A stretch of 63,986 bases of DNA, filler included, from Octopus bimaculoides (lineage: Eukaryota): the NCBI RefSeq assembly GCF_001194135.2. It is 6 parts of 6 records of this genome, joined end to end, with 100 filler letters (N's around TTAATTAATTAA, not from the genome) between each part and the next. Parts side by side here need not be neighbours in the genome. Positions count along the whole stretch, not along the records: positions 18,147 to 24,679 come from NC_068981.1; 5 more parts are not named here. The stretch is one strand, 5' to 3'. Under the pieces are notes generated by a model that was not told where the DNA came from, did not search any database, and saw nothing but the letters and a program-made list of their open reading frames with translations. Numbering within the stretch: the first letter of the stretch is position 1; every line of letters begins with the position of its first letter. Positions 1,201 through 24,794 of the stretch are shown here, piece by piece. The position numbers were made by a program, and so were the translations under genes.

Positions 1201-2485
1201 CAGATGATAGGAGGTTAAAGTAATACAGAGGGGCAGAAAGAAACATTTTACTGTGTAGAGACTGTTAATTTTTTTTTATTAGAAAGTGGTGGGTAGTATA
1301 AAAATACTGAAAGGTAAGAACAGAGTAGGCCAAACGAGCATTCTAAAGAGACACTGTGCATAGCCACAGTCGTAAAAGAAGTTAGTAACTTTGAATATTG
1401 TCGTTACACAAGTTATAATATGACTAAAAGCCAGCAATGAAAATATAAATGAAATTTAACAATCTGATTCTTCCTGTAGGTTGGAAAACTATAGGTCTGT
1501 TGGCCTGTAATTTAGTTGTTTGACAAGAACCTACGAGAAGCGATCGCTATGAAATATTGAAAAGTAAAACGATTAGTCAAGCATCATGTACTAAACAAAA
1601 AATTCTAAGTCACTGAATTTAACATTACATGAACACGAGATGTTCATGGACTGAGAAGTCTTACAGGTTTGTCTAAATGTCATTATTAATATTGTGAAGC
1701 AAATATTTTACTGCAGCAGAAAATATTTCGCAAAACACTTTGTTGGATTTCCAACAAATAATATAAATAATATATCGAATTTAACGGTTAAAAAAATTGT
1801 AACACATTTGACAAGTAACAAATCTAGTGTTTATGGTAAACAATAAACTGTGTAAATACGTCAATAAGATATTTACATTAATAATTCAGGCAAAAAATAA
1901 AGAAAATACAATTTAACTTGGATGAAATACTTTGACGATGTGAAGTGGTGAGAAGTATCAACAGTTCCATTGCTGGAAGGTATCATTACAAATTTTCCAA
2001 TGTGTTTGATAGCTACAACATTAATGACTACTTGGAATCAAATATGAATTGATGCATCACTAAAAGGAACGAAGTGATTTTAATGATGCGAGTCAGAGGT
2101 AAATGACCTTGCTGAAAATAACATAATCGAAAGTAAAAACTGGTTGTAAAAGTAGGAGAAAATTTAACACAAAAGTGAAGATATAAGAAGAAAATATAAA
2201 TAAATAAATAGACGATATGAATAAATTGTTGATATCGTTCAAATAAATGCGATTGTAGTAAAAAGCTAAACAAAAAAGATATCCGAATTTGTTTGGAAAA
2301 ATGCACTTTTTCAATGAAATTTTTTGTGTTCAAATATAAGGCAATTTGCAATATATATTAATTGTAAGATAATAATGCGTCACAACATCAGAGACTGAAG
2401 AGGTGAGTGAAAGTAAGAGAAATATTACAGGTAATTAATCATGGATTAACTCTTCAGATAATAAAAAAAAATTACTGAAGGATTA

Positions 2486-4628: not shown

Positions 4629-5766
4629 CACTTTCCTTCATGCAACACCCGAAACCGTTTCTTGATGTTACAAGAAAATTCGAAAGGGAAGAAAACTAAA
4701 ACAAATATCCTACTAAGAGGTGGGAATGAGAAATTACAGAAAAGCTTCTGCGGAATAGTCACCGAACATCTAGAGGATTCGAAGATAAATTCAATTACAT
4801 TTATATATTACTCCAGCTGTGTTTTTTCGTGAATGTTTTCTCGCTGCCTTGCCTGTAGTTAATTAATTTAAGAGCTCTTAATAGGTGGCTTCATTTAACA
4901 TACCCGTAGTTCTCCGAATATATCCAATATTATAAGAAGAGTAGTGAGCAAAGCGGTAAACCAGGCGTACACCATAATATAATGGAAAAATTAGAAAATA
5001 TATCCATCACATCTTTAGCAGCATTTAGAGTAAGAAACTTCTATTTGAAGCAATGTCAAGCATCAACCAGAATCGAGTTTGTTAAATATTAAGTAGTTAG
5101 GGATCTCAACATGATTTATTCTGTATTTATCAAATCTAAGACAAAATAGATTTAAGAGAATATCGACGTAACCCCTGAATTAATGAAGACTGCGAGAAAG
5201 GGAGGGATCTGGAGAGAATAGAGTTCTACCATAACAGAAAAAAACATAAAAACATCTGATTTTGGAGAAGAAATAATGAACAGGAAGGGAAGGAATGTTA
5301 TACAGTGAGGAATTTGTAGAAGTTTATGGAAAAAAAAGAAGTAAAAAAAAAAACTGCAAAGTAGTTCAAGTTAATTAAATCTACAAATAGATTTTAATAG
5401 AATATTCAGTAGAAATAAATGGTTTATTAAGATGTGTATGTAATTTGAATTGAACTTTATCCATCATGAATATTGGTAAAAAAATTGAAAGTTGTGACAT
5501 GAAGGCAGTGCAATTTTTGTAAGAAAAAAAAAGAGAAACATTTCATCTGGTATCGTGATGCAAAATACGTGATGAGAATAATTATGCGGAAATACATGAT
5601 TTTACGTTTATGATCCTTGAAATAGTATGATTAAAGCAAGCAAATAATGTTTTAAATACGGTTTACTGGTACTGGATTCAGTCAAATGCTGTGGCCATGT
5701 TGGGAGGAACTGCCTTAAGTGTGACGGAGATTTTATTTCTTACTAACTTCTCGGCTTTCTCTCCAG

Positions 5767-18146: not shown

Positions 18147-19022
18147 ATGTATATATAATTACTGTGGCTTAAGTATTCGATCATGTTAATCCTCAGTAAG
18201 ATGGCTGATCACACAAAAAGAGAGCAGAACCCTAACCCGTTGTTCTTGTTGCTTGTCCCCTCATATATCTCGATCTCTGCGTAACATAACAAAATGGCAA
18301 CAAAGGGCTTTCATCCATTATCTTTAAGAAGCCAACAACAATCATTACCCCCAAGACATGTTCTTAACATACACAAACCAACTTCCATATTCAAATCATA
18401 TTTTCGACACAGCATTATTCCTTTCTCTCGTTGATTTTAAGAATTGATAGCAAACCCCAGATTGTTGTTTTTATTCGTTGTCTTCATTTTTCTTCGTTAT
18501 TCTTGTCAATGATAGCAACACATTAAGCAATTATCAATATCTTTGGAGGTGGGGGTTTTGTTACGGGGGTGCTACTTTTTGTTGCGGGGTATTATTTTTT
18601 CTGAATGTACCTAGGTGAACGGTTTCGTACATTGATACGACAAAGTGTACATTGATACGACGGGGTGTATATTGATACGATAGAACGTCTGATAATAATG
18701 TTAATTAGTATTACACTCAAACGCGTAGAGGGAACACACGAAATTCTCTACTGGGGCAGAAAATTGAACAAACTCAGCGACCTTGGAACGAGTTCCTTGA
18801 AGAACCGATTCCAAGCAGTCAGCAGAATAAACAAACTGAGAAAGAAAATATGGTGGAGGCGGGTGAGGTAGGAAAAGAAATCCGATGTTATATTAAGGGA
18901 AAAAACGAAAAGGGAATCTTCAGATGGTTGTATTAAGGGGAAAAAAATCCATCTTTACTGTTTGTTTTTGCAGATGTACAATTTGTCAGTATGTATACGC
19001 CTATATTATATANNNNNNNNNN

Positions 19023-19058
<36 letters not shown>

Positions 19059-20641
19059 TGTGTATGCATGAATGTATATATTTCCTTGGGTGTGTGTGTA
19101 TGAATGTTTATGTATGTATAAATGTGTGTATGTACTTGTATATGTTTAGTAGAGAGAAAGAAAGAGAGAAAGAAAGAGAGAAAGAAAGAAAGACAGAGAG
19201 AGAAAGAAAGAGAGAGAGGAAAAAGAAAAACCAAACAGAGAGAGAGAGAGAGAGAGAGAAAATGGCTTTGTCCTGAAGTTCCCCTCTCAGTCGTGTGATT
19301 CCGAGTTCGACTCCACTACACGATACCTTAGAAAAGTATGTTTTATTTCCCCGGGTTGGTCAATATTTTGCAACCGGAATTTCGGACGTGGAGACTGTGC
19401 GGAACTTAACCCAGGCTTACTATCCCTACAAGAAGTGCAAAAAATCGTGTTAACTGGAACGACTCATGTACTGAGAAGAGCATTATCGCTGTGAAAACAA
19501 CATCTATTCATGAATTTCTTTATTTATTTGTTTATTTATTTATTTATTTATTTTAAATACTATTTTATCTGTGAATTTGCGTGTGTAAACTGGGAATGCA
19601 TACAATGAGCTTCTCTGCCCTAGGTGTACGGAAAACACTCGGCGAGAAATGGAAGAAAATTTGAAGAAAGAAGAAATAAAAAACATAATAATAATAATAA
19701 TAATGATAATAATAATAATAATAATAATAATNNNNNNNNNNNNNNNNNNNNNNNNNNNNNNNNNNNNNNNNNNNNNNNNNNNNNNNNNNNNNNNNNNNNN
19801 NNNNNNNNNNNNNNNNNNNNNNNNNNNNNNNNNNNNNNNNNNNNNNNNNNNNNNNNNNNNNNNNNNNNNNNNNNNNNNNNNNNNNNNNNNNNNNNNNNNN
19901 NNNNNNNNNNNNNNNNNNNNNNNNNNNNNNNNNNNNNNNNNNNNNNNNNNNNNNNNNNNNNNNNNNNNNNNNNNNNNNNNNNNNNNNNNNNNNNNNNNNN
20001 NNNNNNNNNNNNNNNNNNNNNNNNNNNNNNNNNNNNNNNNNNNNNNNNNNNNNNNNNNNNNNNNNNNNNNNNNNNNNNNNNNNNNNNNNNNNNNNNNNNN
20101 NNNNNNNNNNNNNNNNNNNNNNNNNNNNNNNNNNNNNNNNNNNNNNNNNNNNNNNNNNNNNNNNNNNNNNNNNNNNNNNNNNNNNNNNNNNNNNNNNNNN
20201 NNNNNNNNNNNNNNNNNNNNNNNNNNNNNNNNNNNNNNNNNNNNNNNNNNNNNNNNNNNNNNNNNNNNNNNNNNNNNNNNNNNNNNNNNNNNNNNNNNNN
20301 NNNNNNNNNNNNNNNNNNNNNNNNNNNNNNNNNNNNNNNNNNNNNNNNNNNNNNNNNNNNNNNNNNNNNNNNNNNNNNNNNNNNNNNNNNNNNNNNNNNN
20401 NNNNNNNNNNNNNNNNNNNNNNNNNNNNNNNNNNNNNNNNNNNNNNNNNNNNNNNNNNNNNNNNNNNNNNNNNNNNNNNNNNNNNNNNNNNNNNNNNNNN
20501 NNNNNNNNNNNNNNNNNNNNNNNNNNNNNNNNNNNNNNNNNNNNNNNNNNNNNNNNNNNNNNNNNNNNNNNNNNNNNNNNNNNNNNNNNNNNNNNNNNNN
20601 NNNNNNNNNNNNNNNNNNNNNNNNNNNNNNNNNNNNNNNNN

Positions 20642-20677
20642 AACGAGTCAAGTGCTTTACCTTTAAGCTAAACTGAC
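20642..20677 (-). pseudogene. 5' half of a second tRNA-Thr(CGT)-like copy, running into a gap
   Basis: Reverse complement GTCAGTTTAGCTTAAAGGTAAAGCACTTGACTCGTT, with an intact GCTT/AAGC D-stem. Confidence 0.55.
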
Positions 20678-20731
20678 TGCGAGTTGTTCAGCAATTTTAG
20701 GATTTAGAAATTGCAGAACAGTTCGTTACTG

Positions 20732-20803
20732 GGCAGTTCAGCCGAAAGGTAAAGCACTTGACGCGTAATCACAGGGATGTCAGTTCGAATCTCATGGCTG
20801 GTC
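20732..20803 (+). pseudogene. tRNA-Thr(CGT)-like pseudogene or SINE head
   Basis: 72 nt, with D-loop GGTAA, CTTGA-CGCGTAA-TCACA anticodon arm, GTTCGAATC T-loop and acceptor GGCAGTT/GGCTGGT. Every stem carries mismatches. Confidence 0.6.
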
Positions 20804-20898
20804 GTAACGACATTTCCCCCTGCAATATAAGGATAGTTTTTCCTGTTCATGCTTTTGTATTAGCATTATCATGCATTTGAGAATAAATTATTACTGTA

Positions 20899-20971
<73 letters not shown>

Positions 20972-21002
20972 CACATATATATGTGTGTGTGTATGTGTGT
21001 GT

Positions 21003-21241
21003 ATACGACGGGCTTCTTTCAGTTTCCGTCCACGAATGTCACTCACAAGACTTTGGTCGGCCGGAAGCTATAGTAGAAGACACTGCCCAAGGTACCACGA
21101 AATGGGTCTGAACCCGGAGCCATGTGGTTGGAGCAACGTGAAATAAAGTGTTTTCCTCAAAGGCACAACGCGTCACCGGGAATTGAACTCACGACCTTAT
21201 GATTGTGAGCCCCATACCCTAACTACGAAGCCACGCGCCTT

Positions 21242-21243
<2 letters not shown>
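21003..21243 (-). mobile_element. SINE family B fragment fused to a family D-type tRNA head
   Basis: ACGACGGGCTTCTTTCAGTTTCCGTC..AGAAGACACTGCCCAAGG, followed by the reverse complement of GAAGGCGCGTGGCTTCGTAGTTAGGG..GAGTTCAATTCCC. Confidence 0.8.
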
Positions 21244-21285
<42 letters not shown>

Positions 21286-22427
21286 ACGCGCTCGCTCTTA
21301 GAAATGTATAGTATCTGTGTATGTATATGAGTGTATATGTGTGTGTGTCTGTGTATTTCTATATATATACATGTGTTTTGCACTCGGTGCATTACGTACA
21401 GCGAATTTACTAAGTCAGACCGTATTACCCGAAAACAAACAAAGAATCTGTCAGTAAGGGTTTCATTTTACCAGTGATACCCAGGGGTGATGCCGGGACA
21501 TTTGTCTCGTCATATTGATGTAAAGATCGAAGACGGAGATAAACAGGGAGAGATTTTCTGGATCAGGTGACACTGAGTGTGAACAAACAGCGTAGAGTTT
21601 GCATAATTAAAAAAAAAGTGTGTGTGTGTGTGTGNNNNNNNNNNNNNNNNNNNNNNNNNNNNNNNNNNNNNNNNNNNNNNNNNNNNNNNNNNNNNNNNNN
21701 NNNNNNNNNNNNNNNNNNNNNNNNNNNNNNNNNNNNNNNNNNNNNNNNNNNNNNNNNNNNNNNNNNNNNNNNNNNNNNNNNNNNNNNNNNNNNNNNNNNN
21801 NNNNNNNNNNNNNNNNNNNNNNNNNNNNNNNNNNNNNNNNNNNNNNNNNNNNNNNNNNNNNNNNNNNNNNNNNNNNNNNNNNNNNNNNNNNNNNNNNNNN
21901 NNNNNNNNNNNNNNNNNNNNNNNNNNNNNNNNNNNNNNNNNNNNNNNNNNNNNNNNNNNNNNNNNNNNNNNNNNNNNNNNNNNNNNNNNNNNNNNNNNNN
22001 NNNNNNNNNNNNNNNNNNNNNNNNNNNNNNNNNNNNNNNNNNNNNNNNNNNNNNNNNNNNNNNNNNNNNNNNNNNNNNNNNNNNNNNNNNNNNNNNNNNN
22101 NNNNNNNNNNNNNNNNNNNNNNNNNNNNNNNNNNNNNNNNNNNNNNNNNNNNNNNNNNNNNNNNNNNNNNNNNNNNNNNNNNNNNNNNNNNNNNNNNNNN
22201 NNNNNNNNNNNNNNNNNNNNNNNNNNNNNNNNNNNNNNNNNNNNNNNNNNNNNNNNNNNNNNNNNNNNNNNNNNNNNNNNNNNNNNNNNNNNNNNNNNNN
22301 NNNNNNNNNNNNNNNNNNNNNNNNNNNNNNNNNNNNNNNNNNNNNNNNNNNNNNNNNNNNNNNNNNNNNNNNNNNNNNNNNNNNNNNNNNNNNNNNNNNN
22401 NNNNNNNNNNNNNNNNNNNNNNNNNNN

Positions 22428-22502
<75 letters not shown>

Positions 22503-22559
22503 TAGATATATATTATATAATATATATGCATATATGTATGTGTGAAGGTTTGTATAATG

Positions 22560-22597
<38 letters not shown>

Positions 22598-23193
22598 AAG
22601 CGCATGTGTGCGTGCATGAGTTTTGCTAGAAATTCGGAACTGTATGAAAAGCAATACCAAAAAAAATTAATAGGGCGGGAAATAGAAAATATCTATATTA
22701 TAATGAGACCAGGAACGAATGGAAAAGGAAAAGAGAGAGAGAAACAGCAAATAAGAAAAGGAACGAACGTGTGAGAATGTGAAGGAAAGAAAGAAGGATT
22801 AAGAAAGAGGAAATACAAAGAGAGAGAGAGAGAGATGGAGAGAGAGAGGGGGAGAGAGAGAGAGAGGGGAGAGAGAGAGAGAGAGAAAGTAAAGGTGTAT
22901 GCGAGTGTAATGAATGAGAAAGACTTGATAAGTTGATAAAACAGATAAACAATGACACGATAAGACATGTAGAGTAGACAGAGATAAAATGGTAAAGAGA
23001 TATGATATGGTAGAGAGAAAGAGGGAGAGATAGGGAGGAACAGAGAGAGATTAGAATTTGTAATTCTCTTGCATTCAAGGAACTTTAAAATGTAATCACA
23101 ATGGAAGCAAACTTTATTCATCAAGCACTTCGTCATCGGCATCACAACATATTCTCACACTCTCACGCACTTAAGCTAAGAGTTCAGGCCGCC

Positions 23194-23237
23194 TCTGGCT
23201 GAAGAGACTCAGCGTGTCGAAACACCAGTGTTCCAGA
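23194..23237 (+). ncRNA. Type I hammerhead ribozyme motif
   Basis: TCTGG-CTGAAGA-GAC-TCAGCGT-GTC-GAA-ACA-CCAG-TGT-T-CCAGA. All conserved core nucleotides are present, stems I (5 bp), II (3 bp) and III (3 bp) are fully paired, and the cleavage triplet is GUU. Confidence 0.8.
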
Positions 23238-23519
23238 ATGCCGTGCACCAATGGAAAGATTGATGAACGTACTGTCGTCGGAAAAATTATTCTCCTACGA
23301 TGGCTTTAAAAATCACTTCTGCCCCCTTTGCATCGTCTTTATAATAAGCCACTTACCCACAGAGCCGCGCATGCGCAAACCCCTGGATAACACGTTTCTT
23401 ATATGATCTCGAGTTGTGAATGGAAATTGGTAAGCTGTGATAAAGAGAAGGGTATAGGAATATATATATATAAAGAGAGAGAGAGAGAGAGAGAGAGAGA
23501 CGCAAGCATATATGAATAT

Positions 23520-23765
23520 GTAGTAAGAACTGCAAAGTTACGGGGACGTAAACAAACCAACATCGATTGTCAATCAGTGATGGGGAACGCACACACACAT
23601 AGAGAGAGAGAGACGATAGGCTATCGTCAGCTGCCATATACCAAATCCACTCACAAAGCTTTGGTCGGCCCGTGGCTCAAGTAAAAGACACTTAGCCAAA
23701 GCACCATGCAGTGAGACTGAACCTGGAACCACGTAGTTGGGAAGCAAACGTCTTACCACACACCC
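23520..23765 (-). mobile_element. SINE family B (CORE-like, OR2-type)
   Basis: Reverse complement of the tRNA head GTGTGGTAAG..GGTTCAGTC..GC, followed by a CORE-like CTTCTACTATAGCC..GACCAAAGC..GTGAGTGGATTTGG segment. Confidence 0.85.
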
Positions 23766-23812
23766 ACAGCTGCTTGTGACTTTTTAGATTGCTTACTGAA
23801 TTATTTCAATAT

Positions 23813-24030
23813 GGAAGGCGGTGAGCTGGCAGAATCGTTAGCACGTCGGGCGAAATGCTTAGCGGTATTTCGTCCGTCTTTACGTTCTGAGTTCAAATTC
23901 CGCCGAGGTCGACTTTGCCTTTCATCCTTTCAGGGTCGAGAAATTAAGTACAAGTTACGTACTGGGGTCGATCTAATCGACTGGCCCCCTCCCCCAAACT
24001 TTCGGGCCATGTGCCTGGAGTAGAAAACAA
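23813..24030 (+). mobile_element. SINE family A, near-consensus
   Basis: Full head, central domain and tail. Confidence 0.92.
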
Positions 24031-24034
24031 TATG

Positions 24035-24395
24035 GAATACGGCAGACGACGCGCAATCGCAGGGTCGCGGTTTCGATTTCCAGACCGGACGTTGTGAGTG
24101 TTTATTGGGCGAAAACATGTAAAGCTCCACGATGCTCCGGCAGAGGGTGGTGGCGAGCCTTGCTGTACTCTTTCACACATTTTTCTATCACTTTTTCTTC
24201 CTGTTTCTGTTGTACTTGTATCTCAAAGGGCCAGCCTTGTCTCACTCTGTGTCACGCTGAATATCCCCGAGAACTACGTTAAGGGTACACGTGTTTGTGG
24301 AGCTGGCTTAGCCACTTGCACGTTAATTTCACGAGCAGGCTGTTCAGTTGAACCGATCAACTGGAACCTTCGTCGTCGTAACCGACGGAGTGCCA
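24035..24395 (+). mobile_element. tRNA-derived SINE family C
   Basis: GGTTTCGATTTCCAGACC B-box; the body is homologous to the minus-strand copy at 34270-34859. Confidence 0.85.
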
Positions 24396-24441
24396 TGATA
24401 TATATATACACACACACAAATATGTTATACATACACATATA

Positions 24442-24492
<51 letters not shown>

Positions 24493-24794
24493 TGGCAAAG
24501 ATAGCGATGATGATAGTAATGGAGAGAAAGACTAAATATAGTGGTGGTGGTGGTGGTGGTGGTGGTGATACATTCGATGAACCGATAAGATGCTGCAAAC
24601 ATTAGAGAAAGGAGTATATGTGCATGCGTATATGGATAATGTTAGGTGGGTGCATGTGACAACAAGATGTCTGTTTTATNNNNNNNNNNNNNNNNNNNNN
24701 NNNNNNNNNNNNNNNNNNNNNNNTTAATTAATTAANNNNNNNNNNNNNNNNNNNNNNNNNNNNNNNNNNNNNNNNNNNNATATATATATATATA

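What the first reader, a model, noticed from the sequence alone, without database searches (positions are those of the whole stretch)
23182..23248. Structurally complete type I hammerhead ribozyme
Seen: stem I TCTGG(23194-98)/CCAGA(23233-37); core CUGAAGA(23199-205); stem II GAC/GTC with a 7-nt loop; GAA-A; stem III ACA/TGT with a CCAG loop; cleavage triplet GUU, predicting a cut after 23232. Stem I can extend past a 4x2 internal loop (CAGGC 23185-89 with GCC-G-TG 23240-45). Established: type I hammerheads use loop II/stem I docking, and in animals they occur in Penelope-like element LTRs, retrozymes and satellite transcripts. Inference: a possibly still active self-cleaving RNA, marking a Penelope remnant or a cephalopod retrozyme family. 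The upstream ITMEANFIH weakly recalls a GIY-YIG C-terminus. I see no second tandem copy in this window.
Basis: partly seen in the sequence, partly recalled or inferred. Interest (0 to 1): 0.85.

Follow-up and report, generated by a model that had tools for sequence, protein, structure and literature searches.

The report
Lone hammerhead ribozyme motif in octopus DNA
A complete, well-formed copy of the small self-cutting "hammerhead" RNA motif sits alone in repeat-rich octopus DNA; it is most likely a leftover of a ribozyme-carrying jumping gene, a known kind in animals, and nothing yet shows that it still cuts.

Summary
Positions 23193-23238 (+) carry every invariant hammerhead core nucleotide and three helices in type I topology, with the predicted cut after U23232. 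It is the only such motif in the piece. Rfam Hammerhead_1 matches it end to end at 25.8 bits, below the curated cut-off of 34. The chance expectation for this piece is about 1e-6 by the Rfam model and 1.6e-5 to 5e-4 by my own descriptors.

The piece is octopus DNA: its SINEs match Octopus vulgaris and O. bimaculoides sequences.

Nothing beyond the motif supports a specific element:
- no second or tandem copy
- no reverse transcriptase or GIY-YIG reading frame
- no Pfam hit for the "ITMEANFIH" peptide
- no homologous copy in the 40 kb of O. vulgaris DNA I could fetch, or in any searchable collection
- the surrounding ~390 nt does not fold unusually well

Helix geometry (5/3/3-4 bp, near-palindromic helix III) resembles the canonical retrozyme-type hammerhead more than the minimal Penelope-type.

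Best reading: a genuine but solitary hammerhead relic of a Penelope-like element or retrozyme lineage. Activity is untested. It is a new member of a known kind and of modest interest.

The parts
23185..23189 (+). Distal part of helix I, 5' strand (CAGGC). It pairs with 23240-23245.
   Evidence: Read from the sequence. Adding these pairs lowers the energy of the hammerhead fold from -5.4 to -8.6 kcal/mol.
23190..23193 (+). Internal loop of helix I, 5' side (CGCC). CGC 23190-92 is complementary to GCG 23212-14 in loop II, a possible tertiary contact.
   Evidence: Sequence. Three or more contiguous Watson-Crick pairs between loops of these sizes arise by chance with p about 0.14, so this is only a suggestion.
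23194..23198 (+). Helix I proximal, 5' strand (UCUGG).
23199..23205 (+). Catalytic core box C3-A9 (CUGAAGA, N7 = A).
23206..23218 (+). Helix II hairpin: GAC / 7-nt loop UCAGCGU / GUC. The conserved G10.1-C11.1 pair is present.
   Evidence: The helix has only 3 bp, and its pairs have about 2% probability in the predicted ensemble.
23219..23221 (+). Core G12 A13 A14.
23222..23231 (+). Helix III, ACAC-CA-GUGU. It can form 3 bp plus a CCAG loop as a hairpin. It is near-palindromic, so two copies could form an 8-bp helix with a central 2x2 mismatch. A15.1-U16.1 and C15.2-G16.2 are present.
   Evidence: It has the same 4+2+4 layout as the coral retrozyme hammerhead ACAG-UA-CUGU.
23232..23232 (+). 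U17. The predicted self-cleavage is 3' of this base (triplet GUU).
   Evidence: Its position follows from the hammerhead numbering applied. Cleavage itself is not tested.
23233..23237 (+). Helix I proximal, 3' strand (CCAGA).
23238..23245 (+). Internal loop, 3' side (AU), followed by the distal helix I 3' strand GCC(G)UG with a bulged G23243.
23046..23472 (+). The stretch that hosts the motif. It lies between an AG-rich microsatellite (about 22720-23050) and the (AG)n run 23474-23500 that abuts a minus-strand SINE. Whether it is a repeat unit is unknown.
   Evidence: No blastn match in 40 kb of O. vulgaris DNA or in the rest of the piece. GC content is 0.41-0.43. The RNA fold is no better than shuffles (z = +1.3).

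Best explanation
This is a genuine type I hammerhead ribozyme sequence. It descends from a hammerhead-carrying retroelement lineage: a Penelope-like element terminal region, or its non-autonomous derivative, a non-LTR retrozyme. It sits as a single dispersed copy in repeat-rich, non-coding octopus DNA.

In such elements the ribozyme works as follows. Longer-than-unit transcripts fold so that helices I-III bring C3-A9 and G12-A14 around the scissile phosphate. The 2'-OH of residue 17 attacks, leaving a 2',3'-cyclic phosphate and a 5'-OH. The unit-length RNA is then circularised by a host tRNA ligase and copied by a Penelope-type reverse transcriptase. For this copy the cut would fall after U23232.

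Shown here: the motif, its statistical improbability, the octopus origin, and the lack of a partner copy or coding region.

Inferred: descent from a mobile element, and any catalytic competence. As a lone monomer with a GUU site, a 3-bp helix II and a competing hairpin, it is probably a weak or silent cutter today.
For: - All invariant core positions and the type I topology are present, and this is the only such site in the piece.
- Full-length Rfam Hammerhead_1 alignment at 25.8 bits, E=1.2e-4.
- An independent model built from validated retrozyme hammerheads hits only this site.
- Chance expectation is 1e-6 to 5e-4 per piece.
- Several features that my descriptors did not require match natural hammerheads: the G10.1-C11.1 pair, the C15.2-G16.2 pair, the G2.1-C1.1 pair, a near-palindromic helix III laid out like the coral retrozyme ribozyme, and a helix I continuing beyond an internal loop.
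- The host is an octopus. Octopus genomes carry Penelope-like elements (PMC13282606), and all such clades except Naiad and Chlamys carry hammerheads (PMC8557442).
- Monomeric dispersed retrozyme copies are common in animal genomes (bioRxiv 10.64898/2026.07.22.740005).
- The host stretch has low GC content and is about 390-430 bp long, as in mussel retrozyme units of 350-390 bp.
- The energy gap between the hammerhead fold and the lowest-energy fold (6.9 kcal/mol) lies within the 2.3-7.4 range of four validated ribozymes.
Against: - The Rfam score is below the curated threshold (25.8 against 34).
- No homologous copy was found anywhere I could look, so there is no covariation evidence and no copy number: 40 kb of O. 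vulgaris DNA, two protein searches with six-frame translations, and pattern scans of the viral, metagenome and prokaryote collections.
- There is no tandem repeat, no second motif and no reverse transcriptase or endonuclease frame.
- The host stretch is not highly self-paired (z = +1.3 and +0.2), whereas the coral control gives -3.9 and the axolotl controls about -1.9. The mussel control is only -0.4.
- GUU is an uncommon site triplet.
- Helix II has 3 bp, and helix lengths of 5/3 differ from the canonical 6/4.
- The loop nucleotides do not match the archetypal tertiary-contact set. This last judgement comes from my own knowledge and was not tested.
Confidence: 0.62

Rival explanations
1. Chance match: unrelated octopus sequence that happens to satisfy the hammerhead consensus.
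For: - A 2.7-Gb genome is expected to hold about 0.6 chance matches at this Rfam score, about 9 to a compact descriptor and about 270 to a lenient one.
- The finding was picked out because it fits the motif.
- The score is below Rfam's gathering threshold.
- No relatives, no tandem copy and no coding partner were found.
- The hammerhead fold is not the predicted lowest-energy fold, and the 67-nt region folds no better than shuffles (z = +0.67).
Against: - The expectation for this particular piece is only 1e-6 to 5e-4.
- The motif is compact, like natural ones.
- It carries several natural-consensus pairs that the descriptors did not require (G10.1-C11.1, C15.2-G16.2), a near-palindromic helix III and an extended helix I.
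- Real hammerheads number thousands to over 100,000 per genome in other animals that carry Penelope-like elements (PMC4209133, PMC7229834), which far outweighs the chance rate.
Confidence: 0.18
2. One reading: a 5'-truncated Penelope-like element. The peptide upstream of the ribozyme would be the end of the GIY-YIG endonuclease, and the motif would lie in the pseudo-LTR.
For: - Penelope-like elements carry hammerheads near their 3' ends, are usually 5'-truncated, and prefer microsatellite targets (PMC8557442). The stretch is bordered by AG-rich microsatellites.
- Octopus genomes contain Penelope families.
Against: - No Pfam match for the upstream peptide, even at E<=10.
- No homologue for any frame of the stretch among 5.8 billion proteins.
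- The architecture is not the metazoan Penelope 'minimal' type (helix II of 7-8 bp, an extra base after A9, helix III nearly absent).
- Microsatellites are everywhere in this piece. The right-hand (AG)n run is more simply read as the tail of the adjacent minus-strand SINE.
Confidence: 0.12
3. A host-retained (exapted) single-copy hammerhead with a cellular role, like the intronic HH9/HH10 ribozymes conserved in amniotes.
For: - The motif is fully intact while its neighbours are decayed repeats.
- No other copy was seen in the small sample of octopus DNA.
- A GCGCATGCGC palindrome lies 130 nt downstream. Such palindromes are promoter-type motifs; this comes from my own knowledge.
Against: - No gene or exon is detectable in the piece.
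- No conservation data exist.
- 40 kb is far too small a sample to show that the stretch is single-copy.
- Weak helix II and a GUU site are not what selection for cleavage usually keeps.
Confidence: 0.05

Closest known systems
Canonical metazoan type I hammerhead of non-LTR retrozymes and satellite transcripts (coral Amil224, mussel Mg353, axolotl Ax330/Ax353; Rfam RF00163)
   Same: - Type I topology and an identical invariant core, with the G10.1-C11.1 and C15.2-G16.2 pairs.
- A short, near-palindromic helix III. ACAC-CA-GUGU here compares with ACAG-UA-CUGU in coral and ACACGUGU in axolotl.
- Helix I continues past an internal loop.
- The host stretch has low GC content and is about 400 bp long, like mussel units.
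   Different: - Solitary rather than tandem.
- Helix I has 5 bp and helix II 3 bp, instead of 6 and 4.
- GUU instead of GUC or GUA at the site.
- The loop nucleotides are not the archetypal docking set.
- The host RNA is not strongly self-paired.
- The Rfam score is below the gathering threshold.
Minimal hammerheads in the pseudo-LTRs of Penelope-like elements (Cervera and de la Pena 2014, PMC4209133)
   Same: - Type I, the same core, the G10.1-C11.1 pair, and a short helix I of 4-5 bp.
- Palindromic tendency at 15.2-16.2 and in loop 3.
- Mostly found as single dispersed motifs from truncated elements.
- The host phylum carries such elements.
   Different: - Those have a long helix II (6-8 bp), an unpaired base between A9 and 10.1, and little or no helix III.
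- Here helix II has 3 bp, there is no extra base, and helix III has 3-4 bp.
- No reverse transcriptase or GIY-YIG frame lies nearby.
Schistosoma Sm-alpha SINE-like hammerhead elements
   Same: A type I hammerhead within a short non-coding dispersed element.
   Different: No pol III A or B box on the ribozyme strand and no tRNA-like head. No evidence of a repeat family.

Membership tests
Hammerhead ribozyme, type I (Rfam RF00163) | Invariant core: C3 U4 G5 A6 N7 G8 A9, G12 A13 A14, the A15.1-U16.1 pair, and H17 | tested here: met
   CUGAAGA 23199-205, GAA 23219-21, A23222-U23231, U23232.
Hammerhead ribozyme, type I (Rfam RF00163) | Three helices around the core, with helix I open and helices II and III closed by loops | tested here: met
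   Helix I has 5 bp (plus 5 distal), helix II 3 bp, helix III 3 bp. The Rfam alignment covers model positions 1-45 of 45.
Hammerhead ribozyme, type I (Rfam RF00163) | Score at or above the curated gathering threshold (34 bits) | tested here: not met
   25.8 bits, E=1.2e-4 in a 131-nt search. Not reported in the 6.5-kb search.
Hammerhead ribozyme, type I (Rfam RF00163) | Helices supported by covariation among homologues | not testable with these tools
   No homologous copy could be retrieved. No cephalopod genome collection is searchable here.
Hammerhead ribozyme, type I (Rfam RF00163) | Mg2+-dependent self-cleavage 3' of residue 17 | not testable with these tools
   Needs an in vitro transcription and cleavage assay.
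Hammerhead ribozyme, type I (Rfam RF00163) | Loop II / helix I loop tertiary contact | tested here: inconclusive
   An internal loop lies 5 bp from the core, and GCG (loop II) is complementary to CGC (internal loop). That much complementarity arises by chance with p about 0.14.
Metazoan non-LTR retrozyme | Head-to-tail tandem repeats of 150-450 bp, each with a type I hammerhead | tested here: not met
   No tandem repeat of period up to 500, and no second motif in the piece. Assembly gaps at 21635-22427 and 19732-20641 leave some uncertainty. Dispersed monomers of retrozyme families are known.
Metazoan non-LTR retrozyme | Low GC content (<50%) and unit size of a few hundred bp | tested here: met
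   GC content is 0.41-0.43 over 23046-23472. The true unit borders are unknown.
Metazoan non-LTR retrozyme | Unit RNA predicted to be highly self-paired | tested here: not met
   z = +1.3 (23052-23445) and +0.2 (23100-23400). Controls: coral -3.9, axolotl -1.8 and -2.0, mussel -0.4. The mussel control shows that this criterion is weak.
Metazoan non-LTR retrozyme | Expression as linear and circular unit-length RNA | not testable with these tools
   No transcriptome data are available here.
Penelope-like element (pseudo-LTR hammerhead) | Adjacent reading frame with a telomerase-like reverse transcriptase and a GIY-YIG endonuclease | tested here: not met
   No long frames. Pfam gives nothing at E<=10 for the upstream peptides. 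No homologues among 5.8 billion proteins.
Penelope-like element (pseudo-LTR hammerhead) | Minimal hammerhead architecture: helix II of 6-8 bp, an unpaired base after A9, helix III absent or tiny | tested here: not met
   Helix II has 3 bp, there is no extra base, and helix III has 3-4 bp (compared with the description in PMC4209133).
Penelope-like element (pseudo-LTR hammerhead) | A second hammerhead in the other flanking repeat, about 3 kb away | tested here: inconclusive
   None was found with filters off. However, 1,713 of the 6,533 bases are N, including the stretch about 3 kb upstream.

The most novel reading that the evidence does not exclude
The motif marks a so far undescribed cephalopod family of hammerhead-bearing retrozymes, or a host-retained single-copy ribozyme. 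In this reading it still self-cleaves and yields small circular RNAs in octopus tissues. I found no paper in the searchable library that reports hammerhead ribozymes in cephalopods.
Probability: 0.15. Interest if true: 0.5.

Novelty: new member of a known kind. Interest (0 to 1): 0.27.

Why it matters
Hammerhead ribozymes are already known by the thousand in animal genomes, including molluscs, as parts of Penelope-like elements and retrozymes. One more copy changes little. It would matter somewhat if genome-wide searches showed an active octopus retrozyme family. Those elements produce abundant circular RNAs, and cephalopods are not yet on the published list. It would also matter if the motif proved to be conserved at one locus across octopuses, which would suggest a domesticated ribozyme.

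Tried and rejected
- **Rfam on the whole piece**. Only microsatellite-driven false microRNA hits appeared. The hammerhead showed up only when a short stretch was searched.
- **Thermodynamics.** The hammerhead fold is 5.5-7 kcal/mol above the lowest-energy fold, and helices II and III have low ensemble probability. I first read this as evidence against function. I dropped that reading after four validated retrozyme hammerheads gave gaps of 2.3-7.4 kcal/mol.
- **Rod-like fold of the host stretch**. It is not rod-like, but the mussel control is not either.
- **GIY-YIG or reverse transcriptase remnants.** Six-frame translations, Pfam and two large protein searches found nothing.
- **Exact look-up of ten reading frames** of the piece in the protein collection: none is present, so the source contig could not be retrieved.
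- **DNA pattern scans** for the ribozyme in the viral, metagenome (two scans) and prokaryote collections: zero hits.
- **Sampling octopus DNA.** The third protein search, with SINE peptides, gave two O. vulgaris loci of 20 kb each. The element has no match there. P0002 was not on record.
- **tRNA or pol III promoter** on the ribozyme strand: none.
- **CpG decay as an age marker**. CpG observed/expected is about 1 across the piece, so it is uninformative. I dropped the idea that the loop CA arose from CG.
- **Literature.** No cephalopod hammerhead report was found. No supplementary sequence files were held for PMC8557442 or PMC4209133.

Full report
**1. What is in the sequence**

The piece (18147-24679) holds 4,820 real bases and three runs of N. 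It is packed with microsatellites.

- helix I: UCUGG / CCAGA
- core: CUGAAGA
- helix II: GAC / GUC, with the loop UCAGCGU
- GAA
- helix III: ACA / UGU, with the loop CCAG
- U17 at 23232
- a possible distal continuation of helix I (23185-89 with 23240-45) beyond a 4x2 internal loop

A type I descriptor of my own finds this as the only match on either strand.

**2. Is it more than chance?**

Rfam's Hammerhead_1 model aligns the site over its full length at 25.8 bits with E=1.2e-4, when 131 nt are searched. That is below the gathering score of 34. Infernal's filters lost it in the 6.5-kb search.

Rescaling that E-value to one family gives about 1e-10 per base. That is about 1e-6 for this piece and about 0.6 for a 2.7-Gb genome.

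Planted-core simulations with the piece's base composition give:
- 5e-8 per base for a very lenient descriptor with loops up to 39 nt, or 4.8e-4 per piece and about 270 per genome
- 1.7e-9 per base for compact loops like those seen here, or 1.6e-5 per piece and about 9 per genome

I also built a covariance model from four experimentally validated retrozyme hammerheads. These are coral, mussel and two axolotl ribozymes, with sequences taken from the supplement of PMC7229834. With filters off, the model again picks only this site in the piece, at 16.2 bits and E about 0.002.

So the motif is very unlikely to be there by chance in this piece. A genome-wide handful of chance matches still means chance cannot be dismissed outright.

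**3. Where it is**

Peptides translated from two repeats next to the motif hit Octopus vulgaris and O. bimaculoides proteins at 78-90% identity. The piece's repeats match many copies at 70-89% identity in two 20-kb O. vulgaris loci that I fetched. These repeats lie at 21002-21136, 23527-23773, 23815-24036 and 24038-24442. The host is therefore an octopus.

The motif lies in a stretch of about 430 bp (23046-23472). An AG-rich microsatellite lies to its left, and an (AG)n run that abuts a minus-strand SINE lies to its right.

That stretch shows:
- no match to the rest of the piece
- no match in the 40 kb of O. vulgaris DNA
- no tandem structure
- no tRNA or pol III boxes on the ribozyme strand
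- no protein-coding signal: Pfam finds nothing at E<=10, and two searches of 5.8 billion proteins with its translations found nothing

Pattern scans of the viral, metagenome and prokaryote collections found no copy of the ribozyme. None of the available collections covers cephalopod genomes. Copy number and stem covariation therefore remain untested, and those are the decisive tests.

**4. What kind of hammerhead**

Cervera and de la Pena (PMC4209133) distinguish two kinds:
- canonical metazoan type I motifs: helix I of 6 bp, helix II of 4 bp, and helix III of 1-2 bp with a small palindromic loop
- the 'minimal' motifs of Penelope-like elements: helix II of 7-8 bp, an extra base after A9, and almost no helix III

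This motif has helices of 5, 3 and 3-4 bp and no extra base. Its helix III, ACAC-CA-GUGU, is laid out like the coral retrozyme ACAG-UA-CUGU and the axolotl ACACGUGU. It is nearer to the canonical retrozyme type than to the Penelope minimal type, without fitting either exactly.

Helix III is almost self-complementary. Two copies could therefore pair into an 8-bp helix with a central 2x2 mismatch, which is the dimer mode known for newt and axolotl ribozymes.

**5. Can it work?**

The core is intact and the conserved G10.1-C11.1 pair is present.

Points against strong activity:
- The site triplet is GUU. The Rfam consensus has GUC.
- Helix II is short.
- The lowest-energy fold pairs the core bases GCUGA with loop II UCAGC, and pairs GUGU with ACAC. 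This puts the hammerhead fold 5.5-7 kcal/mol higher.

The same calculation on the four validated ribozymes gives gaps of 2.3-7.4 kcal/mol, so this is only a mild negative.

The host stretch is not unusually self-paired: z = +1.3 and +0.2. The coral and axolotl retrozymes are (-3.9, and -1.8 and -2.0), but the validated mussel retrozyme is not (-0.4).

A three-base complementarity between loop II (GCG) and the helix I internal loop (CGC) could give a tertiary contact. It has a 14% chance expectation.

**6. Interpretation**

Three facts from the literature frame the reading:
- Octopus genomes contain Penelope-like elements.
- All such clades except Naiad and Chlamys carry hammerheads.
- Retrozymes appear to be their non-autonomous derivatives and often occur as dispersed monomers.

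The best-supported reading is a genuine hammerhead left by that lineage as a solitary copy (confidence about 0.6).

**7. Known or new?**

The kind is well known, including in molluscs: the mussel genome holds about 5,000 copies. I found no paper in the searchable library that reports hammerheads in cephalopods. I therefore file this as a new member of a known kind, of modest interest.

**8. Side observation**

My own model also flagged an identical pair of hammerhead-like motifs in O. vulgaris locus L001, at 1576-1626 (-) and 5511-5561 (+). They lie near the outer ends of a 900-bp inverted duplication.

They have a perfect core, a 6-bp helix I and a 4-bp helix III. However, positions 10.1-11.1 form a U.U mismatch, and Rfam gives no hammerhead hit. 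They share no flanking similarity with the window's stretch.

This is a weak hint that hammerhead-like motifs are not rare in octopus DNA.

Noticed in passing
L001:1576-1626 (-) and L001:5511-5561 (+) (O. vulgaris OX597819.1): Two identical hammerhead-like motifs: AGCUUC CUGAAGA UUUC-UCUU-GAAU GAA ACAG-N8-CUGU A GAAGCU. They lie near the outer ends of a ~900-bp inverted duplication (arms 1556-2458 and 4681-5581). My model scores them at 19.1 bits. They have a U.U mismatch at 10.1-11.1 and get no Rfam hammerhead hit even at E<=10. No reverse transcriptase frame lies between them.
   Followed up: partly
window 23198-23213: The core bases GCUGA (23198-202) are complementary to loop II UCAGC (23209-13). 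GUGU (23214-17) is complementary to ACAC (23222-25). These alternative hairpins make up the predicted lowest-energy fold and would hide the catalytic core.
   Followed up: yes
window 23190-23192 and 23212-23214: CGC in the helix I internal loop is complementary to GCG in loop II. This is a possible pseudoknot-type tertiary contact. The chance expectation is about 0.14.
   Followed up: partly
window 23367-23376: A perfect palindrome GCGCATGCGC lies 130 nt downstream of the ribozyme. It resembles the NRF1-type promoter motif; this comes from my own knowledge and was not tested.
   Followed up: no
window 21002-21136, 23527-23773 (-), 23815-24036 (+), 24038-24442: Copies of very abundant octopus SINE-like repeats. 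Each matches several copies within only 40 kb of O. vulgaris DNA at 70-89% identity. Peptides translated from them hit annotated O. vulgaris and O. bimaculoides 'proteins', which suggests that those gene models are repeat-derived.
   Followed up: partly
window 20903-21005, 21237-21386, 24391-24497; many sites in L001 and L002: Microsatellites ((AT)n, (GT)n and mixed) give numerous sub-threshold Rfam 'microRNA' hits (mir-3149, mir-297, mir-1277 and others). These are artefacts of low-complexity hairpins.
   Followed up: yes
window 23089-23202: The open frame NVITMEANFIHQALRHRHHNIFSHSHALKLRVQAASG ends on the UGA inside the ribozyme core CUGAAGA. It has no Pfam or database match, so this is probably coincidence.
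   Followed up: yes
window 23046-23480 (+): There is no run of four or more T on the ribozyme strand across ~435 nt at 28% T. By my arithmetic about 2.7 are expected. The stretch therefore holds no pol III terminator, which is mildly unusual.
   Followed up: no
L002:16110-18754: Two reverse-transcriptase-like reading frames: 252 aa on the - strand, and 493 aa on the + strand with a YADDLAL motif. They look like LINE remnants rather than Penelope-like elements. This judgement is by eye; no domain search was run.
   Followed up: no
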